Under the pieces are notes generated by a model. That model did not search any database. It was not told where the DNA came from and worked only from the letters and a program-made list of their open reading frames with translations. This document shows, one piece after another, positions 29,469-54,137 of a stretch of DNA of 64,000 nucleotides. Source of the stretch: Histomonas meleagridis 2922-C6/04-290x (lineage: Eukaryota > Protista > Parabasalia); assembly GCA_020184695.1 (NCBI GenBank), contig JAANOX010000261.1, forward strand, positions 156,178-220,177, written 5' to 3'. Numbering within the stretch: the stretch's first letter is position 1; each line of letters begins with the position of its first letter. The translations under genes and the position numbers were made by a program.

Positions 29469-29559
29469 TATTAAAATAATTAAATGGTTTTTCTTATTCA
29501 TTTATTTTGAAAATTGTTGTAGTTGGAGTATCCCTTCAAAATAGGGATAGAAAGAGTTA

Positions 29560-31122: not shown

Positions 31123-31608
31123 AAATTATTTCACTTTCATAACAAAAAAATGAAATTACTGGTAAAATGAACACGTAATTAGAATAAAGTATTTTATCAT
31201 TTGTTGTACAAAAAACAAAGTATTTGTATTGAATAATTTTCAAATTCTTAATACCAATAGTAATCGAATTATTCATAAAAATTAAGAATATAACTATTTT
31301 ATTTATTATTGAAATACATATCACAGCATCACCACTTTTTGCTGAATTTCACTATATATCTTTTACATTTCCTAATATTAGATTTTTTATAAATTAACTT
31401 ATATGAGAAATTTAGTTCTTTTGATCGTATATATGATATATGTTTACAAACAATGTTTACAACGATTGTAGAATATCATATATAAAATAAAACAAAATTC
31501 ATAACAGCATAATAAATATCATATTTTTATTAATATCTTATTTTTATATGAACAATAATAAACTATCATTTGTGCGATTTAAATATAATTTTTTTATTCT
31601 TGATTTTT

Positions 31609-32760: not shown

Positions 32761-32762
32761 GA

Positions 32763-35154: not shown

Positions 35155-35246
35155 TATTAAAATAATTAAATGGTTTTTCTTATTCATTTATTTTGAAAAT
35201 TGTTGTAGTTGGAGTATCCCCTTCAAAATAGGGATAGAAAGAGTTA

Positions 35247-36972
35247 TTAAAATAGAATTAAAAATAGTAATGAAAAAATACTTACACCAAGAGCAAGTGC
35301 TATAGTTTTTAAACTCGATCTTGATGGAAATGAATTTGATGAAATATTTGAATTTGTGATTGAATTAGAATATATGATAGAATTTGTATATGATATAGAA
35401 AATGTGTTTGCTTTTGTAAATGTATTCGATTGTGTGAATGTGTTTGCTTTTGTAAATGTATTCGATTGTGTGAATGTGTTTGCTTTTGTAAATGTATTCG
35501 ATTGTGTGAATGTGTTTGCTTTTGTAAATGTATTCGATTGTGTGAATGTGTTTGCTTTTGTAAATGTATTCGATTGTGTGAATGTGTTTGCTTTTGTAAA
35601 TGTATTCGATTGTGTGAATGTGTTTGATTGTGTAAATGGATGTGTTGACCATGGATTACAATTTTCAATGGTCGTTCCAATTGATACATTAATTTTACCA
35701 AATTTTTTTGATTTATAAGAATCTAATGTCATTACATATTTGACAGGAGTATCTTCAAATGCATCATCGCTAATATTAGGTTCTGAGTGACCATAATAAT
35801 AAACGCAAGTTAAAGATTTACATTCAAAAAATGCTTTTTTATCAATTGAAACAACATTTTCACCTATAATAACAATTGATAAATTTTCGCAATGTGCAAA
35901 AACTTCTTTATTGATAATAGTTAATGAATTTGGAAGTTCGATTTTTTTAAGAGATCCACAAAAAAAAAAATGCAGCATTTTCAATTGTAGTTATGTTATT
36001 TCCAAAAATAATATCTGATAATTTTTTACAATATAAAAATGCATATTGTTTAATTGTAGAGAGTGAATTTGGTAATATAATTCTCTCAAGTAAGCATTCA
36101 GAAAATGATTGCTGACCAATACTAATCAGATTTTCGTTAAAAATTACTTCTGACAAGTTAAAGCAACGAAAAAATGCACCATTTTCTATTATAGACAGTA
36201 ATTTGGGTAATTTAATACTTTCAAGTAAAATGCATTCGCCAAATGCGCTTACATTGATTATCGAAATTCCTTCTCCAAAAATAACTTCAGACAATTTTTT
36301 ACAATTATAAAATGCGTATTCTCCTATTGCAGAAACTGAATTCGGTAATGAAATTTTTTTGAGTGAAGTACACCGAAATGAATATTTGCTAATCGCTGTT
36401 AGATTTTCTCCAAAAATTACTTCAGACAAATTTTCACAAAAAGCAAAAGCATATTCTTCAATGGTAGTTACTGAATTTGATAATTTAATGCTTTCAAGTG
36501 CTAAACATTCAACAAATGAATATTGAGAAATTTTAATCAATTTTTCATTAAAAATAACTTTTGATAATTTAGTGCATTTATAAAACGCGCTACTACCAAC
36601 CGTATTAACATTTTTGACCAAAAGTAACATTTGATAAGTTTTTGCAATCATTAAATGCATCATTACCAATTAAAGCTACTGAATTTCAAATTTTAGCAGA
36701 TGCTAGATTGATCCACCCCCGAAATACATACGACGGTATTGAAGTAATACTCACAGCGATAATCAAAAAAATAATGCTTCATTTTTTTATAGATTGTTGC
36801 ATTTGTAAAATCTTCCATGGTTTTTTTATTGTTAATGTTTTTTTGTTTGATTATCAAATATTCCAAATGCGGGTATCATAAGATAGTATAATATCAGAAC
36901 AATCATATTTAATAAAATAAAATGATAATGAAAATGACTTATGATTCCAAAAGACACAAAACTAACTTTCAT
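35247..36972 (-). pseudogene. BspA-like gene copy 2 (expanded stalk, homopolymer frameshifts)
   Basis: Duplicate of 29560-31122, split into ORFs 35247-35984 and 35947-36669 by indels in A/T runs; some may be sequencing errors. Confidence 0.85.
35401..35616 (-). repeat. 36-bp stalk repeat, 6 units (BspA copy 2)
   Basis: Units start at 35401, 35437, 35473, 35509, 35545 and 35581. Confidence 0.95.
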
Positions 36973-37435
36973 AAATTATTTCACTTTCATAACAAAAATG
37001 AAATTACTGGTAAAATGAACACGTAATTAGAATAAAGTATTTTATCATTTGTTGTACAAAAAACAAAGTATTTGTATTGAATAATTTTCAAATTCTTAAT
37101 ACCAATAGTAATCGAATTATTCATAAAAATTAAGAATATAACTATTTTATTTATTATTGAAATACATATCACAGCATCACCACTTTTGCTGAATTTCACT
37201 ATATATTTTACATTTCCTAATATTAGATTTTTTATAAATTAACTTATATGAGAAATTTAGTTCTTTTGATCGTATATATGATATATGTTTACAAACAATG
37301 TTTACAACGATTGTAGAATATCATATATAAAATAAAACAAAATTCATAACAGCATAATAAATATCATATTTTTATTAATATCTTATTTTATATGAACAAT
37401 AATAAACTATCATTTGTGCGATTTAAATATAATTT

Positions 37436-38600
37436 TTATTCTTGATTTTTATTTTGATTCAATAACTGAATCAAATATTCACAATGCATCAAAATTTCAT
37501 CATCCGCATCACTTAATAAGAAGTCATTTAATTTATCCTCAATTTCAGCGTATTCCAAAACCTCATTAATTTGTGGAACAAAATTAAACATTTCAATAAA
37601 TATCAAGAGAACAATGTCAACAGTTTTTGGTTTCAAACTATCGCTCATCTCTCCTATACTTAAACCTCCATAAGCTAACAACTTTTGTGCCCATTCAAGA
37701 TTTTTACTATTTCCTATTACAATTGCATAACTTATATCAAGACAATTCACTCTAAACGATAGAGTGCCACTTTTCATAATGTTTGCAATTTTTTCGATCA
37801 TTTGGACTTCGTTAAAAACATCATCGATTTCATCTCTTTCTAACCTTATTAAGCCAATTATAATTTGGCAACAATAAGAAAACACTTCTTGGTCATATAG
37901 ATAATAATATTCTACATCAAAGACAGTTTTTTCAACTAAAATTAATTGGATAATTCAAACATTAAATAAAGAAAGAACTTCTTCAAGTGTTCCTTGAATG
38001 GATATAACAGACAAAAATTCGAAGGGCATACTCAACATAATAATCTCGAAATTTATTTGTGTCATTAAAAAGAATTTTATAACAATAATTTAATATCCCG
38101 GAATTAAAAAATTGACGCGTAAAAATTGGGTCAGTTACAACATTTGAGATAAATTTTTAAAGAAACTGTAATAGAGATGGCATTGTATGGGACGTCTATA
38201 TTAAGTTGCTGGATAAATTGTTGGATAATGAAATTTAACTCTGTTTGGTCAGTAATAAAAAATACGATTTTTTCAATAAAAATACTTGCGTTAGAACGAA
38301 TTTTAAAGTTTTCATTGGGTATAAAGACATTTTCGAAGAATGAGATGATTGGTGTTTTTGCTTAGAAACAAATACGAATCTGGAAATGATGCAATATCTA
38401 TTGAAACATCTTGGGCAAGCAAGACAATTGCTAAAACTTGACTATTTAATGATTGAAATAATTTTTGCAAAAAGCCTATATTTTGAAATGCTGGATGTAA
38501 TACACCAGCAACCTCCTTTACTAAATAACCAATAATTTGAAGAAGATATTCTTCTTCAATTAATTCAATTTCATACTTTTGATATATCTCTGAAATACGA
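37436..38600 (-). pseudogene. ARM-repeat pseudogene, copy 2
   Basis: Duplicate of 31609-32760. Confidence 0.6.
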
Positions 38601-38795
38601 ATGGGAAAAGAAGAAGAAATCGAAACAAAAGAAGAAGAAATTGAAACAAAAGAAGAAGAAATCGAAACGAAAGAAGAAGAAATTGAAACAAGAGAAGAAG
38701 AAATTGAAACAAAAGAAGAAGAAATTGAAACAAAAGAAGAAGAAATCGAAACGAAAGATGATGAAAGATGAATGAATAACAGAAGAAATAGAAAT
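38601..38795 (+). pseudogene. Truncated copy 2 of the EEEIETK protein gene
   Basis: MGK plus 7 repeat units, then a deletion and breakpoint into unrelated sequence. Confidence 0.8.
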
Positions 38796-38899
38796 ATAAT
38801 ACTTATAATTATACCGTTAAATGATAGTATCAATTGCTGTTAATTTTGTTACCGGCTCTGTTACCATCACCATTAACAGTAAATATTAGAAAATATTGA

Positions 38900-39125
38900 T
38901 ACCATCAACTTATATCATAAACTTATACCATAAACTTATATCATCAACTGCAAACAATAAGTATATCATTAAATTCTTTGTCGATTGCAAAAATAAATCA
39001 TATCATCAACTTCTTTGTCGACTGTAAATATAATTATTATCAAAATATCTCATCAACTGCAAACAATAAGTATATCATCAACTTATATCATTAACTGCAA
39101 ACAATAAGTATATCATCAACTTCCT
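38900..39125. repeat. Mosaic minisatellite of ~12-bp units downstream of the primase-helicase
   Basis: Recurrent tatatcatcaact and gcaaacaataag units. Confidence 0.8.
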
Positions 39126-39154
39126 TGTTGATTTTAGCAATTTATCTCTCAACA

Positions 39155-41480
39155 TCAAACATCTCCATTAAATTCTTCATCAATTCTCTTTCTATAAAAT
39201 ACGCGTGTATTCTTTCCGAATATTTTATACTGCATTTTATAAATTTCCTTTTCCATTAACTCTCGCTCAAATGATTTTTTGCTCAATTTAAAACGGTCGT
39301 ATTTTGAATATTGAATATATAAACGATTCATTTTCGATACAGTTATATATTCTATGTCTTCGTCATGATATATTGCATTCTTCCAACATTTTTCTATATC
39401 GTCAAGGAAATCTTCAAGCGGTGATTCTTTAATGGCTCTAATTTGATTTTGAACTATTGACGAATCGTAACGGTCAAATAAATTCCTTTTCACAAAATCA
39501 TCAAGATTTAATGACATTAAATAATTATATAAAGATAATGGAAAATTAATGTCATCAATAACATCTTTATCTTCAAAAAATTCCGATTGAGACATACTTC
39601 TTTCTTTAAATCTAAACATACAAAACCTAGACAGTAACGCTTGGTCTCCTGAATTCAACATGCCGTATAAATCCGCGTGATTTGTATTTAATATATCGAT
39701 TGCGAAATCATTTTCTTGGCGTGTATCACGATTCATTGCTCTTACCGTTTGTGAGTTATTAGTCAATCGCTTTATAATTTATTTGTGGTTTTGTTTGAAT
39801 AATTATCAATTGAAAATTCGTCATATGCTCGGTATAATTTTTTAGCAAATCCACCGTTATGCTTCTCATTTGATTGCTGTTCATTAATTCCGACTAAAGC
39901 AAAATCACCGTAAAGCTTCTTAAATGAATTATCAATATAAGTCTTTCCTGTATTACCAACAAATGAATATTTAATAAAGAATACGGGAGCTTTTTTGTGA
40001 TACTTTAAAGTAAAAGCAGCGATTTTCAGTAAATGATGAAAAGCTTTTATTGCTTCTTCATCGAACAATTGATTTTCAATCAATCGAATCCATTTATTAA
40101 TAAGTTCAGGTTTATCCTCTATCACATCATAACTCGTTGTAATTGACGGCGCTCTAAAGGAAGAGAAAATTTTATTATCATCTCCGACGACATCGTACTT
40201 CACAAAACTTTTGAATCTAACTCTATTCTTAACGTTTCGCAATTCTTCAGAGAGAGATATAGTTTTTGTATCTGAAATCTTTTTATGCCTTTGCCGAATC
40301 ATTTCTTTTTTTTCGGTTGATGTTGGAATCGTGATATCAAAATTTAAATAGTTTTGAAGTGTTTTTTGGTCTAAAACTGAAAAATTGATGTTGTCGTCAT
40401 TGAAAACTTTCATTATATAATCGCCTGAATCAGTGAACGCCAAACATTTTATAAGATTATTAATGTAGTCGTCGACTGTTGAAAAACGAATCATTTCTTT
40501 CAAATAATCGGAGAAACAGTATTTTGAATTTAAAAAATCATCTTTAGAAACATTATTTTTTTTAATTAACGGTAATATGAATTTATTATAATAATCACTA
40601 TTGTGAATTTTTAATATCTTCAATAAAACACCATAATTCTTATATTTTTAATTTTTATTTCTCGCTATTTGTTCAAAGAATTTATTTTTGACATTAACAG
40701 TCAAATCAGCTGTTTCATAAATTTTCATAAACGCATCATTTATTATATCGCGATTGATAAAATCACAATCAAATGAATTGATACCACTAATTACAGGAAG
40801 TAATGAAACCTCAACATCAACAGATTTATTGCAATCATTATGAATTTCAATATTTTTAAAACCACCAACTAAAGCGTTAAATAATTTTAATTTATCCTAT
40901 GAATCTCTCTCTTCTGTTTCTTCTTCATCAAATAATTCTTCATTAAAACTTAATTCTTCACTAATAACAGTAATTTTTTCATTTCGTTTTTCAATCAAAC
41001 TTTCAAAATCAATTTTAATTTCTTCATATAACGTATTTCTAAGTTCATTGGAAGTCATTAATTCATCATTATTGCAATCATTTATTAAAATATATTCGCC
41101 TATTACTCCGTCATGATTTATTGCTTTACTTTCGGGTAAAACCACTATAGAACGTTTATTTGAATCAATCGGCGCAAACAAATCAACATCAAACAATTCA
41201 CAACTGAAGCATTTAATAAATCTATTCTTACTTAAAGGTATTGAACAATCCCATAAACTATAAATATGAGTTCCTCCTGACGCAGTTTTACTTCAAAAGC
41301 TTTAGAAGTAAATGATTTCAAAACTTCTTCTCGTTCACATTTTACGTCTATATCAACAATAGCGTACGGCGATGAATTAGCGAGTAATGCTTCACCAGTC
41401 TTTTTACCAATCTTTACTCCACCGTGTTTTTCATAATTGCGAAGAATAATCTTTCTACCAATGAATGTATCGTTATTCAT
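39155..41480 (-). pseudogene. Bifunctional Prim-Pol (AEP) fused to an SF3-like helicase, frameshifted
   Basis: YAIVDID; after a 1-nt shift in an A run, TASGGTHIY; DVDLF; Walker A VGNTGKTYID; Walker B-like YRAYDEF; ILNTN...SRF. Spans ORFs 41232, 40897, 39772 and 39155. Confidence 0.75.
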
Positions 41481-41570: not shown

Positions 41571-41780
41571 ATGGAATCCATTAATGACATCAATAACTTA
41601 GATGATAACAAAAAACATAGATTGACAAAGAATCAAAAAAGATTGTATATTGATTTTCTAATGCGTGATGATATAAAAGAAATTTTAAAAACAATTCCTA
41701 AAAGGTCACAATTGAATTTTTTAAGACAAGCTTTCGAAAAAGAAACTGGAATTAAAATATCACGTCATATAGCTAATTAA
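41571..41780 (+). CDS. Small basic protein, paralogue of the inverted-repeat protein
   Basis: KHRLTKNQ...AFEKETGIKIS aligns by eye with KGRLRKNQ...LYLNDSGIAVS of 47885-48184. Confidence 0.55.
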   Translation: MESINDINNLDDNKKHRLTKNQKRLYIDFLMRDDIKEILKTIPKRSQLNFLRQAFEKETGIKISRHIAN

Positions 41781-41928
41781 ATAAAACCTGACAAGATTCC
41801 AACAGTCATTTATGGCGGTCAAACTTATATTGTATGTTAAACATTTATTTTTGTCTTTCGATTGTATAGTAATGTGATTCGTCGATCGTTGTATTTGTTG
41901 TTTCATTTGATTATATCACAATGATTTG

Positions 41929-42622
41929 TCGATTTTAAAAAAATTATTGAGTCACAAAGTAACAAGTAACTTTTACATTTCTCTATAACGTCGGAGGATT
42001 CCGCCATCCGCCATTAAAATCAATTTGTTACTCGTTATTCTTTACATTTAACAATAAATATAAGAAGCTCCCATAACATTTAATGAATCGCGAACGGCAA
42101 AAAGTTCCGACATATCATTCGATTATATACATTAATGAAAGCGTTAATTGAAGAAGTCGAGACAAACATTTTTGTTCTTTCATCAACAAAATTATTAACG
42201 TCAAAAGTAGATTTTAATAGTAACTGTTAAATCTTAAGGCGTCATTTTCCTGTCGCCATTAAATTTTTTAAAATTCTCAAGACCGTGCATTTTTGCACAT
42301 CCTTAAATCAAAGTTAATTTTTAAATAACGATTTAAATTTTTATTGATTACAAAAATGAGTAAAATAACAGTTGACCGTAAAGGAAGATTAAGAAAAAAC
42401 CAAGTTATTGATTTTATCCTGTGATACGATACTTTAAAAGATGATTTGAAAAACATGAGCCGGTCGAAGATTCAAGAACTTTATTTAAATGATTCAGGCA
42501 TTGCTGTATCGAACAATTTTATTGCTCAAACTTTGAAAAACGAATATTTAATAAAAGATAATAAGATTTATCGGTTATACGGCGAGTTTGATAACGGCGT
42601 TAATGATAGTTCAACATCAGAC
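41929..42622 (+). repeat. Outer inverted repeat arm A (~694 bp)
   Basis: Reverse complement of 47918-48610, near-identical where compared. Confidence 0.95.
42285..42298 (+). promoter_or_regulatory. Palindromic GTGCA-TTTT-TGCAC upstream motif
   Basis: Also at 42916-42929 and inverted at 48241-48254; each copy lies about 57-60 bp before an ATG (42356, 42989, 48184). Promoter role is inference. Confidence 0.5.
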
Positions 42623-42667
42623 AAAGACGAAGATAAAGATAAAAAAGAAGACAAAGTAAATACATGA
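42356..42667 (+). pseudogene. Arm-A copy of small protein, inactivated by TGG>TGA
   Basis: MSKITVDRKGRL... as in 47885-48184, but with TGA at 42422-42424 where the other copy has TGG. Confidence 0.85.
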
Positions 42668-42988
42668 ATTGAATGATTTTTGATAACAGCTACGGTCGCC
42701 CGTCCCGGGGCGACCATAAGAAACAAGCTTGAAACTCAAAAATACTTCTTCATTTAATTAATTCACAAATGGAAAATACAAACGACTAAACGTAAATTTA
42801 GAAACAAGTCGAAACAAGTTGTGAATGATTCATTTCTTTATATCAATAATTAATCATTACTGTTATTCATTAACGGCAGAAGTCAACACCAACATTTTTT
42901 AAAATTTACAAGACTGTGCATTTTTGCACATCCTCAAAATCAAGTTAATTTTAAAACATACATTTTATAATTTTATTTATATTATAAC

Positions 42989-43366
42989 ATGGAGTTATCA
43001 ATTCCAGAAGAATTTTCAAAATATAATATACCATTTAACATAGAGGAAGAAGAATTTACAAATGCAAATACTATTATAGAAAATATATTTAGAATTTATG
43101 GGAAACAAAATTGCATTGAGTTTTACTTTGACTTTAACGAATCACAAACGTTTGATAATATAGTATATAGAATCAGAATAAACAATATAAAATTTGGTGA
43201 TAATAATATAACGTTTAAAATTCCTGAATACATTCACGTAACAAACACAAAGCATAGAACATTAACTAAGAATAATAATGAAGTCGTTTATCTTACCAAG
43301 AACTCTGAAACGTTCAGAAATAAAGATGGAGTCGTCGTTAAATACTATTATTATCATTTTAATTGA
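42989..43366 (+). CDS. Hypothetical protein between arms A and B
   Basis: Intact 125-aa ORF preceded by the GTGCA palindrome motif. Confidence 0.6.
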   Translation: MELSIPEEFSKYNIPFNIEEEEFTNANTIIENIFRIYGKQNCIEFYFDFNESQTFDNIVYRIRINNIKFGDNNITFKIPEYIHVTNTKHRTLTKNNNEVVYLTKNSETFRNKDGVVVKYYYYHFN

Positions 43367-43393
43367 AAAATCATTGACGGAAGGATAAATTTA

Positions 43394-44048
43394 AAACAAG
43401 TATCTTTGTGTTGAATGACAAGAAAATTGATTTTCAGTAATTATGAACATTAATCAAAAAATCATTGATTCGACGAATGAAACAGAAACGTTTAAAATTG
43501 ATTTCTCAAACAAATACTTTTCATTCTCGATTTCATAAACGGAATCATTAATTTAAAACATGTCAAAACAAGTGTGAATGATTCATATTATTTTTAATGC
43601 TACCTAACAATCTAACTTAACTTAACCTAACAAAAAATTTTGGAGAAAGACTTTTCAGAAATAGCTGTTTCTTCGAACCATCATTTTTGATTGTGTGAAA
43701 TTATCCGAAAAATGCAAGTTAGCAACAGTTGCTGAGTTGTGTGTGCAAGAAAACACACAAAAATACTTTTACAATTAATCCGAATAATTAATGACAAAAA
43801 CATAAATACCTTTCATTTCTTGATTTTTCATAAGCGGCAAAACGTAATTTTAAAACGTGTGTTTTTCAGTGTATTTTCTTCAGAAAGTATCATTAAAATT
43901 TCAAAGGTGATTTTTAACGAAAAAATTCACCCTCAACGAATCGGAGTAAATGAGCGTTTTTTGAATGATTTAACGTAAATATTGCATGTTTGCTTGAGTT
44001 GCTGAAAGGTTAAAATTTTATTTTTTTTTAACCCTCAAATTTTTCATT
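43394..44048 (+). repeat. Inner inverted repeat arm B
   Basis: Reverse complement of 46271-47091; the right arm carries extra internal repeats at about 46560-46735. Confidence 0.95.
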
Positions 44049-45300
44049 GACATATATCACTAACTCAGTCGTAGATTTCACATATTTCTTGTTCTTCAGT
44101 CACATTAACATTAACGTAAGAAGTTGATTTTACATATTTCTTGTTCTTCAGTCACATTAACACTAACGGAGAGAAGTCAATTTAAAACAAGAATTTTTGT
44201 GTATAAATGATTTAAAAATTGATTTTTAGTAATTACAAATAATATATATAAAAAGTTATTGATTCGTCAAATGGACGCATTGGTGAAGACGTTGATTTTG
44301 CATGTTAAGACTTATTCAGTAATTAATTCCACTGTAGATTTTCAGTGTTTACATAAAATATTTATACTACCCGATAACTTGATATACCAGGTAGTTATCA
44401 GGTAAAATTGCGATTAGCTAAAGGGAAATCATAATTGTTCTGTGAGTTATTCTAACTTGATGATATGAGCCGGATATTGCATGTTTGCGGGAGCTACTGA
44501 ATGAAAGCGTCAACGGCAAGACGTATATTTAGAAACAAGTGTTTTTTGTATAAATGATTGAGAAATTAATGATACAGTAAACTATAAAACATTCATTTAT
44601 AGTCATTGATTCGTCAAATGGACGCATTAATGAAAAATTGATAATGATTCAGTATTATAAAATATATCATTGAAATTTCGAAGGTGATTTATTAACCTTA
44701 AAGTTAACCCTAAACGAAACGGAGTAAATGAGCATTTTTTGAATGATTCAACGTAAATATTGCATGTTTGCTTGAGTTGCTGAAAGGTTAAAATTTTATT
44801 TTTTTTTAACCCTCAAATTTTTCAGTAACATATAACATTACCGGAGACGTAAATTCAGAAACAAGAATATTTCAGTTGAATAACAAGAAAATTGATTTCC
44901 AGTAATTATAAGAACATTCATATATACATTAATTAGAAGTTGTTGCATTCGACGAATGATAGCATTAACCGCTCAAAAAATAATTCTTCATTCATTCGAA
45001 TAGTTATTGAAAGTTGACGGAAGGATCCTATAAAAATACTAATACTACTATCAAAAAAGTTATTAGCAACAGTAAATTCAAAATGTTCTGTGAGTTATTC
45101 TAACTTGATGACTTGACGTGAATTTTGCATGTTTACGTGAGCTGTTGATTGATTAACAAACGGTGAATGTTGATTTAAAACAACTATTTTTATGTTGAAT
45201 AACAAGAAAATTGATTTTCAGTAATAATTCACATTCATATGAACATTCATATAAATATTCATTATAAGTTATTGATTCTCTGTAGATTTAAGCGCGAATG
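43834..45300 (+). repeat. Degenerate ~330-bp tandem array
   Basis: aacgg..aaacgtaa.tt.aaaacaag-type module at 43834, 44165, 44512, 44841 and 45169 (spacings 331, 347, 329, 328), mostly followed by aagaaaattgattt.cagtaa and attcg.c.aatg. Confidence 0.8.
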
Positions 45301-45462
45301 CTGTGATTGACATTATAATTTCAATGTTTTGTATTTAGTGTTTTGTATTTGATGTTTTGTATTTAGTGTTTTGTATTTACTTCTTTTGTATTTTATAAAT
45401 ATATCACTATTAAAATTAAGTTGATTTATAATTTTATTTTTCATTTTTTTTATTTATATAAA

Positions 45463-45921
45463 ATGGATATTGAAAAACATATTTCAAACGAAGAAGAAGA
45501 TTGTAAAGTTATTGATATGATTGAAAAGAAATAAGAAATTATAACCAATAACTTAATTCAAAAAATCGAAACTTTAAAACTAAATGACAAATTAGAGGTA
45601 TTAAAGAAAATTAATAATAATCCTGAATTTTATGACAAGAAACAAATTTCAAAGGATGAAGAAGAAGAATATGAGCTCGAAACTTTAGCTGACATTTCGT
45701 TTGAAGCTGTTGATATCAGAGAGTTTAAAAATTCAAAGTTTGAAAATTACTACTTCGATATTCGCGTTCATGGGTTCTATTTCTTCGACGGTATTTTTTA
45801 TCATCGTTTGCGCGTAAATTATGACCGACTCGAAAATGCGTTCGTGTTCTTACGTGATATTTACGATATATTAGTTTCCGTTCGTTTGTCTTATTATTAT
45901 AAATTTGTGGGGTTGTACTAA
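45463..45921 (+). pseudogene. HNH-less paralogue of the HNH protein C-terminal domain, one in-frame TAA
   Basis: Not in the ORF track. ATG at 45463, TAA at 45532-45534, then ...DIREFKNSKFENYYFD...FYFFDG...AFVFLRDI...Y*, matching IEMKEYAGHELEVYYYD...FYFWNG...AFVRVRDI of 47227-47784. Confidence 0.7.
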
Positions 45922-46270
45922 GTAATTTTATTTTTGTTTTTTCATTAAATACAAAACACTAAATACAAAGCATTATATACAAAAAAACACTCGTTCGAAA
46001 ATTACGTTTTACCGTTAGTGTTTCATCAAGAAACGAAACGTATTTATGACGATTGTTTATGTTTTATCATTACGTCTTATCAAGAGTGATTGTATTTATT
46101 TTTAAATTTGAATGAAGATTCAACTATTTTTCAATTAATGGAAATCAATTTTTCTTGTCATTCAACTGAAAAACACTTGTTTGGAAATTACGTTTTGCCG
46201 TTAATTTTATATGTTGATGAATAAGTATAAACATGTAATATATACTTCTCTCCGTTAGTGTTTGTATGCT

Positions 46271-47091
46271 AATGAAAAATTTGAGGGTTAAAAAAAAAAT
46301 AAAATTTTAACCTTTCAGCAACTCAAGCAAACATGCAATATTTACGTTAAATCATTCAAAAAACGCTCATTTACTCCGATTCGTTGAGGGTGAATTTTTT
46401 CGTTAAAAATCACCTTTGAAATTTTAATGATACTTTCTGAAGAAAATACACTGAAAAACACACGTTTTAAAATTACGTTTTGCCGCTTATGAAAAATCAA
46501 GAAATGAAAGGTATTTATGTTTTTGTCATTAATTATTCGGATTAATTGTAAAAGTATTTTTGTGTGTTTTCTGTTTAGTTTCAACACATTCATTAACGTA
46601 TTCAGATGAATGAAGAAGTATTTTTTGTGTGTTTTCTGTTTAGTTTCAACACATTCATTAATTATTCGGATTAATTGAAAAAGTATTTTTGTGTGTTTTC
46701 TGTTTAGTTTCGCTTGAATCATAAGGTCCGGTGTTTTTGCACACACAACTCAGCAACTGTTGCTAACTTGCATTTTTCGGATAATTTCACACAATCAAAA
46801 ATGATGGTTCGAAGAAACAGCTATTTCTGAAAAGTCTTTCTCCAAAATTTTTTGTTAGGTTAAGTTAAGTTAGATTGTTAGGTAGCATTAAAAATAATAT
46901 GAATCATTCACACTTGTTTTGACATGTTTTAAATTAATGATTCCGTTTATGAAATCGAGAATGAAAAGTATTTGTTTGAGAAATCAATTTTAAACGTTTC
47001 TGTTTCATTCGTCGAATCAATGATTTTTTGATTAATGTTCATAATTACTGAAAATCAATTTTCTTGTCATTCAACACAAAGATACTTGTTT
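46271..47091 (-). repeat. Inner inverted repeat arm B'
   Basis: Partner of 43394-44048. Confidence 0.95.
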
Positions 47092-47226
47092 CCAAATTTA
47101 CGTTTTGCCGTTAAATATAATCATTAATTCCTCCGTAAAACTCTTGATTTTCAGCTGATTTTAACGAATTATAAAAAATTAAGTTCATCTTTTAAAAAAT
47201 TTATTTTTTCAATTTCTATAAAAAAT

Positions 47227-47784
47227 ATGAGTTGGATTAGTTGTGTTGTTGATAAAGATTACGAAATATTCTCAGAATTTCCTTATCAAATAAAAAGAAA
47301 ATCGAACAAGAAAATTATTAAAGATACGTTAAATAAAAATGACGGTTATATTTGCTGTCGCTTAAATAACAAAACATATCACAAACATAGAATCATAGCG
47401 TTGCAATTTATTCCGAATCCTGAGAATAAAACACAAATAGATCATATGAATTACGACAGAACAGATTTTCGCATTGAAAATCTTCGATGGGTTTCGGCGT
47501 CTGAAAATTCGAATAATGTCGCATCATACAGAAAGGATTCTGAGTATTTTGACGAAATTAACGAGGATTCAATTGAGATGAAAGAATATGCCGGTCATGA
47601 GTTGGAAGTATATTATTATGATGATGAAACAGATGCGTTTTATTTTTGGAACGGTATTAAATTCAGAAACCTTAATATTTGTCATAATAAGCGCGGTTAT
47701 GCTTTTGTTCGTGTTAGAGATATAAATAATAATAAAGTTGAGATATGTTATGCAATATTCAAAATAATTTACGGCTTTGTTTAA
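47227..47784 (+). CDS. HNH (I-HmuI/NUMOD4-like) endonuclease
   Basis: DGY...L...HRIIA..FIPNP...IDHMNYDRTDFRIENLRWVSASENSNN. The Asn expected in the D-N-R position is Phe here. Confidence 0.85.
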   Translation: MSWISCVVDKDYEIFSEFPYQIKRKSNKKIIKDTLNKNDGYICCRLNNKTYHKHRIIALQFIPNPENKTQIDHMNYDRTDFRIENLRWVSASENSNNVASYRKDSEYFDEINEDSIEMKEYAGHELEVYYYDDETDAFYFWNGIKFRNLNICHNKRGYAFVRVRDINNNKVEICYAIFKIIYGFV

Positions 47785-47884
47785 TTTATTTATAACTTAT
47801 ATTTTCCAATTATTGATAATCAATTTTCTTGTCATTCATAACTTGTTTCGACTTGTTTGAATCAATGATTCCGTTCATGATTTT

Positions 47885-48184
47885 TCAATTATCTTCTTCT
47901 TTATCTTTATCTTTTTCGTCTGATGTTGAACTATCATTAACGCCGTTATCAAACTCGCCGTATAACCGATAAATCTTATTATCTTTTATTAAATATTCGT
48001 TTTTCAAAGTTTGAGCAATAAAATTGTTCGATACAGCAATGCCTGAATCATTTAAATAAAGTTCTTGAATCTTCGACCGGCTCATGTTTTTCAAATCATC
48101 TTTTAAAGTATCGTACCACAGGATAAAATCAATAACTTGGTTTTTTCTTAATCTTCCTTTACGGTCAACTGTTATTTTACTCAT
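47885..48184 (-). CDS. Small basic/acidic protein carried in arm A'
   Basis: Intact 99-aa ORF; duplicated in arm A. Confidence 0.7.
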   Translation of the reverse strand: MSKITVDRKGRLRKNQVIDFILWYDTLKDDLKNMSRSKIQELYLNDSGIAVSNNFIAQTLKNEYLIKDNKIYRLYGEFDNGVNDSSTSDEKDKDKEEDN

Positions 48185-48610
48185 TTTGTAATCAATAAAA
48201 ATTTAAATCGTTATTTAAAAATTAACTTTGATTTAAGGATGTGCAAAAATGCACGGTCTTGAGAATTTTAAAAAATTTAATGGCGACAGGAAAATGACGC
48301 CTTAAGATTTAACAGTTACTATTAAAATCTACTTTTGACGTTAATAATTTTGTTGATGAAAGAACAAAAATGTTTGTCTCGACTTCTTCAATTAACGCTT
48401 TCATTAATGTATATAATCGAATGATATGTCGGAACTTTTTGCCGTTCGCGATTCATCAAATGTTATGGGAGCTTCTTATATTTATTGTCAAATGTAAAGA
48501 ATAACGAGTAACAAATTGATTTTAATGGCGGATGGCGGAATCCTCCGACGTTATAGAGAAATGTAAAAGTTACTTGTTACTTTGTGACTCAATAATTTTT
48601 TTAAAATCGA
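47918..48610 (-). repeat. Outer inverted repeat arm A'
   Basis: Partner of 41929-42622. Confidence 0.95.
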
Positions 48611-48631
48611 GGAGTCACTAAATGATATAAC

Positions 48632-48770
48632 AAATGAAACATGAATTTTCAAGCGTTAATACAACAATCAACAAAGAAGTTTATGATATCATTAATTTTG
48701 AAACATGAATTTTTAAGCGTTAATACAACAATCAACAAAGAAGTTTATGATATCATTAATTTTGAAACAA
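48632..48770 (+). repeat. ~65-bp tandem duplicate, with related copies at ~52430-52500 and ~53000-53040
   Basis: gaaacatgaatttt.aagcgttaatacaacaatcaacaaagaagtttatgatatcattaattttg occurs twice; similar modules lie downstream. Confidence 0.8.
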
Positions 48771-48899: not shown

Positions 48900-51800
48900 T
48901 AAATACTCTCTACACATCAATAACTTTTAAATTTACTGGCTTTTCTCCTTTCTCTGTTTCCTTGTCATTAAACGATTTTTCATAAGCTTTATATTCAATT
49001 ATCGCGTAAAGGTCAGGTATCTGTTCTTTTGGCTCTAATTTATAAATCCTCACGCGATTCTTGCTGTCATTAATCATTATATAATTTTAGCAATCAGGGT
49101 GAGTATCAATTAGAGCTTCATATTGTTTTCTTGTTATTCTTTGCATTTCGCAAACGCTCAATAATTTTCTAGCTAATCTCGTTTGTTTGTATCCTTCAAT
49201 CTTGATGTTATCAATAACTAAACCGTGACTTTTATATTATCAACAATGAATCTATCAACAGCGTTTAAATCTAAATACTGACGTTCAAGCTGTTCATCAA
49301 ATAAAACATTACTCTTATCGTTTATTTTTCTAATTAACGCCTCAGGATTAAATTCAGTAACATCAACTTGTGTTTTCATGTAATGTTAAAATAATTCCAT
49401 GTACTCTTTCACGTAATCGCCTTGTTTGATTGGCTGGAATTCCTTATACAAATTATTGAAATATCCTTCATCTCCACATTTAGAATTATTAACTTCAAAA
49501 TAAATTAATCGTCTATCTTTTTTTTCTTCTTGTATCGGATTAGGATTATTAGAAGTTAAGATATAGTTCGCCCAAGATTCAATTTCTATTGAGTCTATTT
49601 ATTTTGTTCCTTTAATAGTATTTTTTTGCGTAAGCTTTGATTTCATTTTTCCTAAATATTTAAATTTCTCTGTCGCTTCTGGCGGTTCATTTATGACTAT
49701 CACTACTAAGTTGCGATCAATCAAACCGTTAAACTTACCAAATACTTTGTTTAGGTCATCACAAATTCTTAATACATATTTACCTAGAATCTCACAAAAT
49801 AATTCAATTGGTGAACTCGAGAGTCTGAGTAGCATACCCAAAACATACCCACTTTTGGACGGTTATTCCCACAATTTTCGACTTTTTGAATTCGATGTAA
49901 AATAACCGTCTCATTTCTTCAAAATTTCGGATAAAAAAAATTTCGAAAAAATAAAGCTCAACAAAATAAAATAATTTCAACAATAGTAATAACTATATCA
50001 ATATAATTATTCATGAATAGTATAGAATTAAATAATAATGAGTATTCGTGTAAAAAACGATATTGAAAATAATCATAAAATATTTTAAAATAAATAATAT
50101 AATCGAATTCTCCATATGTTAAAACATATTACTGTATTATTTATTTGCCAAAATACAAAATGTATATCGTGTTATTAGCAAATGTTTTTGATGTCCATTA
50201 TGCATTATTGAATTCATGTTCAAAAAGTGGGAATTGTGAAGAAATTTCATTCAATTTTAATTTCAATACTTTACATTTTTGCCACAATAAATTCTGAACA
50301 AATAAAAAATGACATTGTAAAACAAAATAATTTAAATGAATAATCAATAAATAAGAATAATTATATACATTAAGCATTGACAAACAATGAGCTACAAAAT
50401 ATATTCTTCAATAAGCATTAAATGACAATAATTTATGAAAAACATTATTTACAATCATTGATAAATAATGAATTATAATGATTTTTTTTATTAAACAATA
50501 ATAAACAAAGAATATTAATGATTTGTTTTTTTAAACATCAATAAAATATGAATAATAATGATTTACTCTATAAAGCAATAACAAACAATGAAGTTTAATG
50601 ATTTGTTTTATTAATCATCAATAGACAATGAATAATAATGATTTCTTTATTCAACAATAATAAACAATGAATAATAATGATTATCATTAATTAAACATTA
50701 ATATACAATGATTTATAATTATATGTTTGAGTAAACATTAATAAACAATGATTATCATTCAAATATCACATCATCATATGAGAAATAGTCTGAGTATTTT
50801 GATACAATCTCTAAAATAGTGATTTTTGTATTATTCTTAAACGGCTTATAAAGCATGAATTCAAAATGAATTTCTGGCATTAACGTCTTTATTATAAATT
50901 TCTGTTTGTTGTTGATTTATTTAATATATACCCTTCTATTACAAAATCCAAATACTCCGTGTAAGTCTGACAGTAATTTGCAAATTCATTTTTTGAGTGA
51001 CGTTTTTTTGTGAAATTCTCAAACGTATAAGTTGATGTATTTACATTTACTGGATCATCAATGACATCATAAATTTTGTATTTATCTCTAATACCTTCTA
51101 AGAGTTTGTTTATTATACTAAAATACCATCTATTAGTATCTTCCTTTTTATAATATCTGCCAAGAACTGATTGTATCGTATGTTCTACGGCATGCTGGTG
51201 TTCATTATCTGAATACCATTTAACCAAAACATTCTTCAAACGAGTTTTTGTATAAGGTGAATGATAAAGTGGCGCAAGGTCATTTAAGAGAACATTAAAT
51301 TCAGCGTCAAAATTATTCAACAACTCCAACAGTAAAGTTCTGAATAATTTTGAGTTCATCATCAAATTCTAACTCATCAACGTCGAAATTATTTTGTTTC
51401 CTTTCTTGCATCATTCTCTCTGTTTGTTCTTTCTTTGTTTCCTTCGGCTTGAATATTTTGCTTCATTCTCTTTTAGTTATTAACTATTTGTTTCCTCTTA
51501 CTTGAATTATTTGAGTTACCGGTTTTTTGTCTTCACATATAAATCCATGATTTAATTTATTGTTTGAGTCATTTTGTTTAAATATTTTATCTGATAGAAC
51601 GTGACGAAATAATTGACTCGTCGTTTTATTTTCTCTTTTTGACACAAGCTTATAAACGTTAATATCGCAAAATTTATTTATTCCATTCCTATAAAATCCT
51701 TTCTTTTATGTGTGTTTCATTATTTCTGTCAAATTTTTTGTAAAAATTCTTTTTTCATAGAAGACAGCGTGAATTGATAAATAATAATTATCATTCTCTA

Positions 51801-52013: not shown

Positions 52014-52529
52014 TTCGTCATAGCTTATAGTTTTTGGTTTAAAATTATTTGGTCTAATTATTAATAATTACGTAACACTTTATCTTATTTTTTGATTTTT
52101 TTATTTCATTATATAAGGAGTCGATCAAAACATCAGAGACTTCAATCGAACTATTAAGCATTATTTATATACTGATTAAAAAATCAGAATTGCAGTTTAG
52201 AGATGAGCTTTATTTTTGAACATTAGGTTTTTTGTTGTTCGGATTGGGAGTTGATATTTCAGTTCATGTGAGTCGTCAATTTGAAACTTGTGGGAATAAA
52301 TTATAAATTAATTCAAAAATCAACTGTGCACGGTTTGAAGCCTCTGTTCTGAGCTCGCGATATTTCTTTGGTTCATCTGCTCAGCTTAAAAACATTCAAA
52401 TTTACAAAATCATTAGTGACTTCATACGAATGAAACATGAATTTTCGAACGTTAAATACAAAAATCGACGAAGAAGTTAATGATATCATCGATTTGAAAC
52501 AAGAATTTTTGCAAATTACAAACGAGCAA

Positions 52530-53600
52530 AATTCTGCGGTTCATTTGTACGTTATATATTACCACGTCATGACGGAATAACTAAGAAAAATATCAAATCA
52601 GCCGTGAATGTTATAAAATTGATAAAAGAAAAAAAAACATGTACGTTTTAATTGCTCAAGACGGAGCAGTAATAACAAAACCAAGATCTAAATTAATATC
52701 GATTGGCGATTTGCAAAACAAAGTTCGCTTCGCGAATAAATAACCTGATAATATTAAATGGGCATTAACATTTCCTGGTAAATGAAACGGTACCGTTGAG
52801 TCAATTCTATCATTTAATCCTAAAACAAATAAGTATAAAATACTTTTTACCGTTCCTGGGATTCGACGTATAGAGATGAAATTCCTGCTTCATTTCTCCG
52901 CGGCAATACTCTTCATAAACAGTCAGAAATTAAAAAAGCCTCTTCGAAGCATCAAAGTCTTAAAGACCGAAGAATGTTTTAAAAATTAGCATTAGTTATG
53001 ATATCATCGATTTGAAACATGAATTTTCAAGCATTGAATAGAGCAGAATTTTGCGATTCATTCGATATTGTGAGTCGGCAATTGATTTATTTTTAATTTC
53101 AGACTTAAATCCTTCGAAAAATGCTCATTTTCTCCGATTCGTTGAGGGTTCACTTTTGAGTTAAAAAATCATTTTTGATTTTCAAATGGTACTTTTTTGA
53201 TAAAAATTAACATTCTTCATAAAGTATCTTCATCAACTTCGTCATCAACTATATGTTCTTTTATTTTTCTGTAATATTTTTCGAACCTATCATAAACTTC
53301 TGGCAATAAATTATATACATTAAATACTTTTCCATCAATTCTTTTTGCAATAGCATTTCCCGTAAATTTTTTCATATTTGCAATAAATGTTCTTGAGCTG
53401 CAACTGTTGAATTTGTTTTTTTCAACAAAATCACAATAAAGATTAAATTAATCAGGACCAGTAATATTTTTGATTTTATCATAATTGTCTCTAGCGTAAA
53501 TTTTATAACTTGACATTGGAGCTTCTTTAATATTTTCTTTTGCTTCAGTATTTGGTATTACTCTTAAATTTGTTTTTGACACATCACACACACACAGCAC
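52530..53600. mobile_element. Inverted, diverged remnant of the integrase/helicase junction of element 2
   Basis: Integrase C-terminus on + (52530-52940, matches the reverse complement of ~25830-26200), shared spacer motif, helicase C-terminus on - (53216-53590, matches 24970-25340). Confidence 0.8.
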
Positions 53601-53984: not shown

Positions 53985-54137
53985 ATGAAATCTAATGGAG
54001 AATGGCAAACAACTAAGGTTGATTATGATTATGAAATTAACACTAATTATTCATATCAGATAAGAGATAAACATACTAAAAGAATTATTAAAGAAAGTTA
54101 TAATAGATGTGAAATATTCTGTGAAATATATTTCTAA
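53985..54137 (+). pseudogene. Truncated N-terminus of an HNH/NUMOD4-like protein
   Basis: WQTTKVDYDYEINTNYSYQIRDKHTKRIIKESYN aligns with WISCVVDKDYEIFSEFPYQIKRKSNKKIIKDTLN of 47227. Confidence 0.6.

What the first reader, a model, noticed from the sequence alone, without database searches (positions are those of the whole stretch)
41929..48610. 6.7-kb nested inverted-repeat unit with swappable gene slots
Seen: two pairs of long inverted arms, A (41929-42622/47918-48610, ~693 bp) and B (43394-44048/46271-47091), share roughly one symmetry centre. The slots between arms hold different genes (125-aa ORF on the left, HNH nuclease on the right), and the centre holds an HNH-related pseudogene. Arm A carries its own small gene pointing inward. 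Established: Maverick TIRs are several hundred bp long. Inference: this is a compact non-autonomous element with composite TIRs, or a tail-to-tail fusion of two viral genome ends. It could also be an invertible cassette system. I know of no described parabasalid element with this layout.
Basis: partly seen in the sequence, partly recalled or inferred. Interest (0 to 1): 0.8.

Follow-up and report, generated by a model that had tools for sequence, protein, structure and literature searches.

The report
Mosaic palindrome of viral-element gene cassettes
The nested inverted repeat is real, but it is not a transposon with terminal repeats: it is a recently homogenised palindrome in a graveyard of virus-like elements in Histomonas meleagridis, and its two mirror-image slots were filled by different small mobile genes, one of them a homing endonuclease.

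Summary
Arms A (41922-42630 / 47910-48617, 709 nt, 98.7%) and B (43387-44044 / 46276-47098, 99.5% plus a tandem-repeat expansion) are nested around a 2.2-kb centre. The slots hold ORF125 (left) and an intact I-HmuI-like HNH endonuclease (right).

The window is Histomonas meleagridis contig JAANOX010000261.1. It carries at least three decayed Maverick/polinton-like elements (rve integrase, D5-like primase-helicase, A32 ATPase).

Uncultured relatives (about 80% nt) keep the order arm-A gene, non-coding repeat array, central gene, in direct orientation and with no slot gene. The HNH cassette (about 47173-47808) and the ORF125 family sit in quite different contexts in related elements. The slots are therefore real cassette sites.

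There is no target-site duplication. Identity falls from 99% to 75-80% at every arm edge rather than ending. The arm-A gene is under purifying selection (dN/dS 0.13-0.18). That fits an inverted duplication kept uniform by gene conversion, with cassettes inserted afterwards. It does not fit a TIR element or two fused genome ends.

Whether the unit inverts cannot be tested here. I rate it a new variant of known kinds, of moderate interest.

The parts
41922..42630 (+). Arm A, left copy. It is a 434-nt upstream part followed by the first 275 nt of the 99-aa gene. The upstream part includes motif M1 (42263-42348, with the palindromic core GTGCA-N4-TGCAC).
   Evidence: M1
42356..42652 (+). armA99, left copy (one part, first base to last). 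It is broken by one in-frame stop and has no frameshift.
   Evidence: tblastn 95% over 99 aa in one frame; stop count
42631..43386 (+). Slot L. In order it holds the tail of the arm-A gene, a GC-rich hairpin, an M3-like motif (42795-42842), M1 (42894-42980) and ORF125.
42989..43366 (+). ORF125, an intact gene of unknown function. It belongs to a small family of 122-125-aa proteins. One member lies between the integrase and the primase-helicase of a related element.
43387..44044 (+). Arm B, left copy. It is non-coding. It starts with motif M2 (43386-43454), contains M3 (43533-43596) and ends in an AT hairpin (about 44007-44032).
   Evidence: the gene caller found no ORF in the homologous parts of L008
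44045..45322 (+). Degenerate tandem array of B-like and M2-bearing units. It is present only on the left of the centre.
   Evidence: (D1, D2, D4, D8, D9)
45325..45393 (+). Innermost inverted-repeat arm: 4.9 copies of the 14-nt unit TGTTTTGTATTTAG.
   Evidence: (I14); also inverted around the gene in relatives
45463..45921 (+). Central gene (one part). It encodes a 152-codon nuclease-less homologue of the HNH protein's C-terminal domain and has one in-frame stop. Relatives carry it as an intact 151-aa ORF.
45946..45984 (-). Innermost inverted-repeat arm: 2.8 copies of the 14-nt unit, reverse orientation.
46276..47098 (-). Arm B, right copy. It carries 2.9 copies of a 65-nt tandem unit (46526-46711) where the left arm has one.
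47099..47909 (+). Slot R. It holds the HNH cassette, bounded by M2 copies at 47031-47100 and 47808-47838 and an M3-like motif at 47832-47880.
47173..47808 (+). The HNH cassette as delimited by homology to relatives (73-74% nt). It comprises a short upstream region, the gene and about 24 nt downstream.
   Evidence: L026, L027, L033, L034
47227..47784 (+). HNH185, an intact I-HmuI-like HNH_3 endonuclease. It has an N-terminal nuclease half and a beta-rich C-terminal domain, and it is antisense to the adjacent arm-A gene.
   Evidence: Pfam, PHROGs, PDB 1U3E by sequence and by fold, invariant H54, D72, H73, N85, N94, N97
47885..48184 (-). armA99, right copy. It is intact at 99 aa, under purifying selection, and related to the C-terminal domain of a 195-aa HNH protein of a metagenomic element.
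47910..48617 (-). Arm A, right copy.
39518..40872 (-). Left neighbour: a D5-like primase-helicase gene of a Maverick/polinton-like element, split into two ORFs (one part).
   Evidence: 25-39% to the DUF5906 protein of L001; ORFs
49218..49983 (-). Right neighbour: a decayed remnant of a second primase-helicase gene with several stops (one part).

Best explanation
The 6.7-kb unit is a recombination-built, imperfect palindrome. It lies in the accessory-gene region of decayed Maverick/polinton-like endogenous viral elements in the Histomonas meleagridis genome.

Its ancestral core is a direct-order module: promoter motif M1 with the armA99 gene, then a non-coding array of B-type repeats, then a central gene bracketed by short inverted 14-nt arrays.

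In this lineage the A+B part was copied in inverted orientation to the far side of the central gene (inferred). Short motifs already present in both orientations may have served as the crossover or template-switch points.

The junction between A and B, precisely between motif M3 and motif M2, is a cassette site. The left arm holds M1+ORF125. The right arm holds a free-standing I-HmuI-like HNH homing-endonuclease cassette in antisense (shown).

The two cassettes are unrelated, so they block pairing between the arms. The flanking A and B tracts are kept at about 99% identity by arm-to-arm gene conversion or a very recent copy event, possibly helped by repair of HNH-made nicks or breaks (inferred).

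armA99 and the central gene are nuclease-less descendants of C-terminal domains of two HNH subfamilies. By analogy with other homing endonucleases these are probably DNA-binding domains, and the two proteins may bind the repeated motifs of the locus (speculative).

Homologous recombination between the 0.7-kb arms would flip the interior and give up to four isomers. This is a by-product, not a programmed switch.

The locus behaves as selfish or neutral DNA: two of its five genes carry a stop.
For: Structure:
- Arms and nesting.

Host and context:
- Host identity.
- Element genes throughout 13-63 kb of the window: rve, A32 ATPase and DUF5906, and homology to the 12-24-kb metagenomic elements L001-L007 and L016.

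Ancestral direct order:
- L008, L011 and L012 are colinear with the window from 42212 to 45509 at about 80% nt. The arm-A gene runs straight into mid-B (43548) with no slot gene.
- L017 continues through the central cassette, and its flanking short repeats are inverted relative to those of L008.

Cassettes:
- Homology of the closest HNH relatives is confined to 47173-47808. There the gene lies between two unrelated element genes.
- Related elements carry several HNH_3 genes each.
- An ORF125 homologue lies between integrase and helicase in L016.
- Both arms share the framework A - M3 - {cassette} - M2 - M3 - B.

Genes:
- The HNH protein is intact and I-HmuI-like.
- armA99 has dN/dS 0.13-0.18 and is 40% identical over 47 aa to the tail of another HNH protein.
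- The central gene is 37% identical over 54 aa to the HNH185 tail.

Conversion signature:
- Identity is 98.7-99.5% inside the arms and 75-80% in the 70 nt outside each of the four edges.
- The arm mismatches that were binned cluster near one inner edge: 3 of the 4 gene-part mismatches lie in the last 60 nt.
Against: - The inverted right-hand copy could not be looked for in relatives, because their contigs stop before it. The palindrome might be ancestral rather than specific to Histomonas.
- Gene conversion cannot be told apart from a very recent duplication followed by two cassette replacements using one genome.
- No cleavage site or homing event is shown.
- DNA binding by armA99 is unsupported by structure (AlphaFold pLDDT 46.6; no Pfam or PDB hit).
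- The structure rests on one ONT+Illumina assembly.
- The copy number of A and B in the rest of the genome is unknown.
Confidence: 0.55

Rival explanations
1. It is a compact non-autonomous transposable element. Arm A, or A plus B as a composite, is its terminal inverted repeat, and integrases of autonomous Maverick-like elements move it in trans.
For: - The inverted arms are several hundred bp long, as in Mavericks.
- Integrase-bearing elements lie in the same window.
- Four of five related contigs start within about 25 nt of the same point upstream of armA99. A repeat boundary or an element end would produce that.
Against: - No target-site duplication at either candidate boundary.
- Homology continues at 75-80% beyond the arms.
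- The point where the related contigs break is inside arm A, 290 nt from its outer edge.
- Arm A has no similarity to any other element copy in the window.
- Arm A mostly consists of a promoter and a selected gene.
- Relatives carry A and B once, in direct order.
Confidence: 0.12
2. It is the junction of two copies of the same element region, or two genome ends, joined head-to-head by insertion or illegitimate recombination. Each half then comes from a different element copy that carried a different cassette.
For: - The region is a pile-up of fragments of at least four element copies with inverted segments.
- A primase-helicase remnant lies on each side of the unit.
- A 120-nt piece of B, and the ORF125 family, belong to the integrase-helicase intergenic slot of related elements.
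Against: - Mirror homology stops about 70 nt outside the arms.
- The two flanking helicase remnants are on the same strand and belong to different subfamilies.
- Two independent copies would not be 99% identical in A and B when other element copies in the window differ by 20-30%.
- The centre is a single conserved gene cassette, not a junction.
Confidence: 0.12
3. It is an assembly artefact: a fold-back chimera of nanopore reads, or a false join between two dispersed copies of an A-B repeat family.
For: - The genome was assembled from ONT reads polished with Illumina.
- Palindromes are a known product of fold-back reads (own knowledge).
- B-like repeats at 89-90% identity lie near the centre and could mislead an assembler.
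Against: - A fold-back read gives a perfect palindrome with a trivial centre.
- Here the arms are interrupted by two different intact ORFs, the 2.2-kb centre is asymmetric and holds a gene that is conserved in relatives, and the arms differ by 12 substitutions and a repeat-copy difference.
Confidence: 0.08
4. It is a programmed invertible switch, shufflon-like. Nested inverted repeats are recombined on purpose to change which small gene lies next to which promoter.
For: - Nested inverted repeats exist at three levels.
- Promoter-like motifs (M1, M2) are shared between cassettes.
- Another inversion bounded by inverted repeats is visible in element copy 2 (53351-53558 / 55333-55540).
Against: - No serine or tyrosine recombinase was found in or next to the unit among the ORFs of 60 aa or more that were scanned.
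- The nearest integrases are DDE-type, decayed and at least 4 kb away.
- The arms are long homologous tracts, not short crossover sites.
- Inversion would not change the promoter-gene adjacency of any cassette, since each carries its own upstream motif.
- Two of the five genes are broken.
Confidence: 0.05

Closest known systems
Free-standing homing endonuclease genes of phages and large DNA viruses (I-HmuI of phage SPO1; seg/mob genes of T4-like phages; HEGs reported in polinton-like viruses, PMC12220804)
   Same: - The protein is an HNH_3/NUMOD4 protein. Its only significant PDB match, by sequence and by fold, is I-HmuI.
- It is a discrete cassette of about 640 bp with its own upstream region.
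- It is present or absent at otherwise near-identical sites, and the same cassette occurs in unrelated contexts.
- Related elements carry several copies each.
   Different: - The 'alleles' here are the two arms of one palindrome in cis, inside a eukaryotic chromosome.
- The HEG-less arm is not empty but holds another cassette.
- The C-terminal domain is a beta-rich fold with no PDB match, not the helix-turn-helix tail of I-HmuI.
- Homing itself is not shown.
Maverick/Polinton elements and polinton-like endogenous viruses of parabasalids (Bellas et al. 2023, PMC10120064)
   Same: - The host group is the same.
- The neighbouring genes match: rve integrase, primase-helicase, A32-type ATPase and a conserved 510-550-aa protein.
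- HNH genes are annotated in such elements.
   Different: - The unit has none of the core genes and no target-site duplication.
- Its arms are not element termini.
- No protein-primed polymerase was detected in the ORFs of this window that were scanned.
Large gene-converting palindromes and inverted repeats (ampliconic palindromes of the human Y chromosome, plastid IRs, poxvirus ITRs; from own knowledge)
   Same: - The arms are about 99% identical around a unique spacer.
- Identity drops sharply at the arm edges.
- Flip-flop isomers are expected.
   Different: - It is much smaller.
- The arms are interrupted by non-homologous cassettes, which gives two nested conversion tracts.
- Conversion is inferred from one genome only.
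Foldback-type elements and Tlr1 elements of Tetrahymena (long inverted termini built of tandem subrepeats; from own knowledge, Tlr1 mentioned in PMC12220804)
   Same: - The inverted arms are partly made of degenerate tandem units.
- The interior is variable.
- It is associated with integrase and helicase-bearing virus-like elements.
   Different: - There is no duplication of the target.
- The tandem units are mostly on one side only.
- The arms include a selected protein gene.
Site-specific invertible segments and shufflons (Gin/Hin systems, R64 shufflon; from own knowledge)
   Same: It has nested inverted repeats with small genes between them.
   Different: It has no invertase and no short crossover sites, and each cassette brings its own promoter-like motif.

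Membership tests
Non-autonomous Maverick/Polinton-type TIR element | 5-6-bp target-site duplication directly outside the terminal repeats | tested here: not met
   The flanks at 41921/48618, and at the weaker boundary 41899/48641, share no direct repeat.
Non-autonomous Maverick/Polinton-type TIR element | Homology between the two ends stops at the element boundary | tested here: not met
   Mirror homology continues at about 78% for about 70 nt outside arm A.
Non-autonomous Maverick/Polinton-type TIR element | The arms match the termini of autonomous copies | tested here: not met
   Arm A matches nothing else in the window. Only about 120 nt of arm B match an internal integrase-helicase spacer of two copies. 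The termini of intact elements are not available.
Non-autonomous Maverick/Polinton-type TIR element | Dispersed copies of the whole unit in the genome | not testable with these tools
   The rest of the assembly cannot be searched by DNA here.
Free-standing HNH homing endonuclease gene (I-HmuI-like) | HNH catalytic core present and conserved | tested here: met
   - Pfam HNH_3 E 2.5e-13.
- Invariant H54, D72, H73, N85, N94, N97 in 79 homologues.
- PDB 1U3E by sequence (E 0.002) and by fold (E 6e-4, probability 1.00).
Free-standing HNH homing endonuclease gene (I-HmuI-like) | Presence/absence at otherwise homologous sites | tested here: met
   Present in the right arm, absent from the left arm and from relatives L008, L011 and L012 at the same junction.
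Free-standing HNH homing endonuclease gene (I-HmuI-like) | The same cassette is found in unrelated genomic contexts | tested here: met
   L026-L036: homology is limited to 47173-47808 and the flanks are other element genes. There are several HNH genes per element in L001.
Free-standing HNH homing endonuclease gene (I-HmuI-like) | Cleaves the cassette-free site and is copied in by repair | not testable with these tools
   No biochemical or population data are available.
Site-specific invertible segment / shufflon | A dedicated serine or tyrosine invertase encoded in or beside the segment | tested here: not met
   No such domain was found in the ORFs scanned between 40.9 and 51.4 kb.
Site-specific invertible segment / shufflon | Both orientations present in a population of molecules | not testable with these tools
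   Raw reads are not available here.
Gene-converting palindrome | Near-identical arms around a unique spacer, with a sharp fall of identity at the arm edges | tested here: met
   Identity is 98.7% and 99.5% inside the arms and 75-80% in the adjacent 70 nt at all four edges.
Gene-converting palindrome | Arms more alike within a genome than between strains or species | tested here: inconclusive
   The arms differ by about 1% from each other and about 19% from metagenomic relatives. However, it is not known whether the relatives have two arms.
Foldback-type element | Long inverted termini made of tandem subrepeats, plus a target duplication | tested here: not met
   Subrepeats are present but asymmetric, and there is no duplication.

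The most novel reading that the evidence does not exclude
The locus is a self-maintaining 'cassette exchange' palindrome of a virus-like element. The HNH enzyme nicks or cuts the partner arm, and repair keeps A and B identical. Occupancy of the slot by another cassette (ORF125) protects that arm from invasion. The nuclease-less DNA-binding-domain genes (armA99, the central gene and possibly orf69) act as regulators or site-protecting factors on the repeated motifs M1/M2 and the 14-nt arrays. On this reading the unit is a functional module conserved among gut parabasalid elements, not debris, and recombination between its arms produces several isomers.
Probability: 0.1. Interest if true: 0.7.

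Novelty: new variant of a known kind. Interest (0 to 1): 0.4.

Why it matters
It offers a clean natural comparison, within a single DNA molecule, of one site occupied by a homing-endonuclease cassette, occupied by an unrelated cassette, and empty (in relatives).

It shows that the Maverick/polinton-like elements of gut parabasalids carry a large, mobile family of I-HmuI-like HNH genes. It also shows that these genes have spawned small nuclease-less offshoots, at least one of which is under purifying selection. This is how the accessory regions of such elements are reshuffled.

For genome annotation, it warns that long inverted repeats in these genomes need not mark transposon ends.

It does not reveal a new kind of mobile element.

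Tried and rejected
Searches that found nothing:
- Phage DNA collection: no match.
- Rfam and tRNA scans of the unit: nothing, so B is not a known RNA gene.
- armA99 relatives in IMG/VR and JGI metagenomes: none.
- Exact conserved 20-mer and 34-mer scans: no match in IMG/VR, and eight matches in JGI metagenomes, none of them related.
- Literature search for the sample accessions: nothing. The habitat of the relatives is therefore not established. The sample labels reminded me of ruminant-gut studies, but that is memory, not evidence.

Protein analyses that gave no answer:
- AlphaFold model of armA99 from 5 sequences: pLDDT 46.6, so it was not used for a fold search.
- Pfam, PHROGs and PDB give nothing for armA99, ORF125 (only a sub-threshold GEVED hit) or the central gene.
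- The 510-aa conserved protein (61241-62773) has no PDB sequence match. It remains only a candidate capsid protein.

Ideas considered and dropped:
- The flanking helicase fragments as two halves of one gene split by the unit. Both contain the D5 core.
- The short motif arrays at 38.9-39.1 kb and 48.6-48.8 kb as terminal repeats of a larger 9.8-kb element. Only about 25-36 nt match.

For the record: while reading the sequence I saw where the stops in the two broken genes lie. Only their counts are given in this report.

Full report

Yes. The repeat finder and a BLAST self-comparison give two nested inverted pairs.
- A = 41922-42630 / 47910-48617.
- B = 43387-44044 / 46276-47098.

Global alignment gives these counts.
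- A: 9 mismatches and 1 indel in 709 nt.
- B: 3 mismatches, plus 3 gap events covering 167 columns. The gaps are almost entirely two extra copies of a 65-nt tandem unit in the right arm (46526-46711).

The slots hold different intact ORFs.
- ORF125: 42989-43366, + strand.
- A 185-aa HNH_3/NUMOD4 protein: 47227-47784, + strand.

Arm A carries an inward-pointing 99-aa gene. The right copy is intact. The left copy has one in-frame stop and is otherwise identical over the first 88 codons.

- The central gene (45463-45921) is bracketed by inverted arrays of a 14-nt unit (45325-45393 / 45946-45984).
- The 1.3 kb left of the centre is a degenerate tandem array of B-like units.

**2. Where are we?**

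An annotated DM10-domain protein of the window is encoded on GCA_020184695.1, contig JAANOX010000261.1. The accession prefix belongs to the Histomonas meleagridis genome paper (PMC8529796). That paper reports ONT+Illumina assemblies and 28.7% GC.

From 13 to 63 kb the window is a pile of decayed virus-like elements.
- An rve integrase lies at 25773-26798.
- An A32-type ATPase lies at 59267-60163, and DUF5906/D5-like helicase pieces lie at 24.2-24.7 kb.
- There are two diverged copies of the same gene set at about 20.3-27.4 kb and 52.5-63 kb, with several segments inverted relative to each other.

Metagenomic contigs of 12-24 kb (L001-L007, L016) carry the same set: integrase, ATPase, primase-helicase and a 550-aa conserved protein. 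L001 carries several HNH_3 genes, and L016 none among its called genes.

Such Maverick/polinton-like endogenous viruses, with Pri-Hel or pPolB, rve or YR integrases and occasional HNH genes, are already described for parabasalids (PMC10120064).

The unit is flanked by two helicase genes, both on the minus strand.
- Left: a split primase-helicase gene (39518-40872).
- Right: a decayed helicase remnant (about 49218-49983).

**3. What are the pieces?**

*HNH185.* Evidence that it is an I-HmuI-like endonuclease:
- 129 homologues at 35-69% identity, nearly all of the same length.
- Invariant H54, D72, H73, N85, N94 and N97.
- A confident AlphaFold model, pLDDT 91.5.
- The only significant PDB neighbour, by sequence and by fold, is the nicking homing endonuclease I-HmuI (1U3E).

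The match covers the N-terminal half. Residues 110-185 form a beta-rich domain with no PDB match.

*Central gene.* It shares only that C-terminal domain (37% over 54 aa). Relatives have it as an intact 151-aa ORF (P0130). It is therefore a nuclease-less derivative, not a decayed HNH gene. Here it carries one stop.

*armA99.*
- It has four close homologues at 78-86%.
- dN/dS against them is 0.13-0.18 with dS about 0.55-0.63, so it is a real, selected gene.
- Its first half is 40% identical to the C-terminal tail of a different, 195-aa HNH protein of L001.
- Its fold could not be predicted (pLDDT 46.6).

*ORF125.* It has three full-length homologues at 34-42%. In L016 the homologue lies between integrase and primase-helicase.

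*Arm B and the array.* They are non-coding in relatives: the gene caller found no gene in 1.7 kb of L008. They match no RNA family.

**4. Comparative anatomy**

Contigs L008, L011 and L012 (about 81% nt) are colinear with the left half of the unit, from 42212 to 45509. In them the end of armA99 runs directly into mid-B (window 43548). There is neither ORF125 nor HNH.

L017 continues through the central cassette (45389-45942, 79%). Beyond the gene it carries the same short repeat that L008 has upstream of it, in inverted orientation.

So the order armA99, repeat array, central gene with its small inverted brackets is ancestral. The relatives' contigs end before the place where an inverted A'+B' would lie, so the age of the palindrome is open.

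Both arms share one framework: A - M3 - {cassette} - M2 - about 80 nt - M3 - B.
- Left cassette: M1+ORF125, in sense. M1 is the same 87-nt upstream motif that precedes armA99. Its GTGCA-N4-TGCAC core is kept in four of the five related contigs.
- Right cassette: the HNH gene in antisense, between two M2 copies.

The closest HNH relatives (62-67% aa, L026-L036) are homologous to the window only over 47173-47808. There they lie between the 3' end of the 754-aa-family gene and a convergent gene, both of which are found in element copy 2 of the window.

The HNH cassette is thus a discrete unit that almost exactly fills slot R and occurs in unrelated contexts.

The integrase-helicase spacer is likewise variable. 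It holds an ORF125 homologue in L016, and a B-like 120-nt piece in window copies 1 and 2b.

**5. Boundaries**

No direct repeat flanks the unit.

At each of the four arm edges identity drops from about 99% to 75-80% but does not vanish. Outside arm A about 70 nt remain alignable in mirror orientation, after which the flanks are unrelated.

Three of the four mismatches in the coding part of arm A lie in its last 60 nt.

This step pattern is what conversion tracts, or a recent partial copy laid over an older homology, would give. The termini of a transposon would not.

**6. Explanation and rivals**

Best explanation (0.55): a mosaic palindrome. The sequence of events is as follows.
- An ancestral direct-order module existed (shown by comparison with relatives).
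- Its A+B part was duplicated in inverted orientation (inferred).
- Different mobile cassettes came to occupy the same inter-motif site in the two arms. This is shown as an outcome, and the mobility of the HNH cassette is shown by comparison.
- A and B were homogenised by arm-to-arm conversion, or the copy is very recent (inferred). Repair of HNH-made lesions possibly promotes this (speculative).

Flip-flop inversion is an expected by-product. Two of the five genes carry a stop, so the locus as it stands looks like decaying selfish DNA.

Rivals:
- Non-autonomous TIR element (0.12). It fails the duplication, boundary and terminus tests.
- Head-to-head junction of two element copies (0.12). The flanks are not mirrored, and the arms are far more alike than any other copies in the window.
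- Assembly artefact (0.08). The asymmetry, the different intact ORFs and the conserved central gene argue against a fold-back. A false join cannot be excluded without reads.
- Programmed invertible switch (0.05). There is no invertase, and each cassette brings its own upstream motif.

**7. Comparison and novelty**

The HNH cassette passes every membership test for a free-standing homing-endonuclease gene that could be run here. It has the catalytic core, it shows presence/absence variation, and it occurs in varied contexts.

The arms behave like a small gene-converting palindrome. The host elements are of a described kind.

Three things are new.
- The arrangement: two conversion tracts nested around a cassette site, so that the two 'alleles' of a homing site sit in cis with different occupants.
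- The nuclease-less offshoots of two HNH subfamilies, at least one of which is under selection.
- The density of this HNH family in the related elements.

I rate it a new variant of known kinds, with interest 0.4. The most novel reading still open is a functional, self-maintaining cassette-exchange module with site-protecting DNA-binding proteins. I give it about 0.1.

**8. Limits**

- Only one assembly could be read, and the rest of the genome and the raw reads could not be searched.
- The relatives are short contigs of unknown habitat.
- The functions of armA99, ORF125 and the central gene are unknown.

Noticed in passing
window 29254-32923 and 34940-38761; 33975-35084: A 3.7-kb segmental duplication (97-99% identical) carries BspA-type leucine-rich-repeat genes (LRR_5, E 1e-81). 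The two copies are separated by about 2 kb that encodes a Tc1/mariner-like transposase in two ORFs (HTH_48 E 5e-7; weak DDE_3).
   Followed up: partly
window 13.4-19 kb, 20.3-27.4 kb, 52.5-63 kb: At least three decayed copies of Maverick/polinton-like elements lie here, carrying integrase, primase-helicase, an A32 ATPase, a 754-aa-family gene and a 510-aa conserved ORF at 61241-62773. Copies 1 and 2 are 67-82% identical in nucleotides, and several blocks are inverted relative to each other.
   Followed up: partly
window 52538-53591 and 53351-53558 / 55333-55540: A fragment of another copy (integrase 3' part, spacer, inverted helicase 3' part) sits upstream of the helicase of copy 2. This creates a 77%-identical inverted repeat around that helicase. 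An N-terminal HNH remnant lies at 54003-54107.
   Followed up: partly
window 38937-39131 (inverted), 48635-48769, 52426-52510: Arrays share a motif of about 22-36 nt (TCAACAAAGAAGTTnATGATAT). One lies just outside arm A' as two 64-nt tandem units. One lies beyond the left helicase in inverted orientation. One lies next to the truncated integrase at 52.5 kb. Their meaning is unknown.
   Followed up: partly
window 41571-41780: A 69-aa ORF just left of arm A also resembles the C-terminal tail of the 195-aa HNH protein of L001 (tblastx 45% over 38 aa). It may be a third nuclease-less offshoot.
   Followed up: partly
window about 42690-42711: A GC-rich perfect hairpin (GGTCGCC...GGCGACC) lies just after the left armA99 copy in an otherwise 27%-GC region. 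It is absent from the right arm.
   Followed up: no
L001 (ENA ERZ28019012 k141_1389534) and L002-L004: A metagenomic element of about 24 kb carries five HNH_3 ORFs, one of them running off the end of the locus, plus a truncated HNH-like ORF. These are interspersed among its core genes. That is an unusually high load of homing-endonuclease genes.
   Followed up: partly
window 5836-11784: A 1982-aa ORF on the minus strand has no Pfam match and a strong AT skew. The database gene model for this region is 1409 aa.
   Followed up: no
window 32644-33134 and 38482-38822: 21-nt tandem repeats lie inside ORFs (32763-33647 and 38312-38833) at the ends of the duplicated segments.
   Followed up: no
L008, L009, L010, L011 starts: Four independently assembled related contigs begin within about 25 nt of the same point, equivalent to window 42196-42220 and just upstream of motif M1. 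This suggests a repeat or module boundary there in the relatives.
   Followed up: partly
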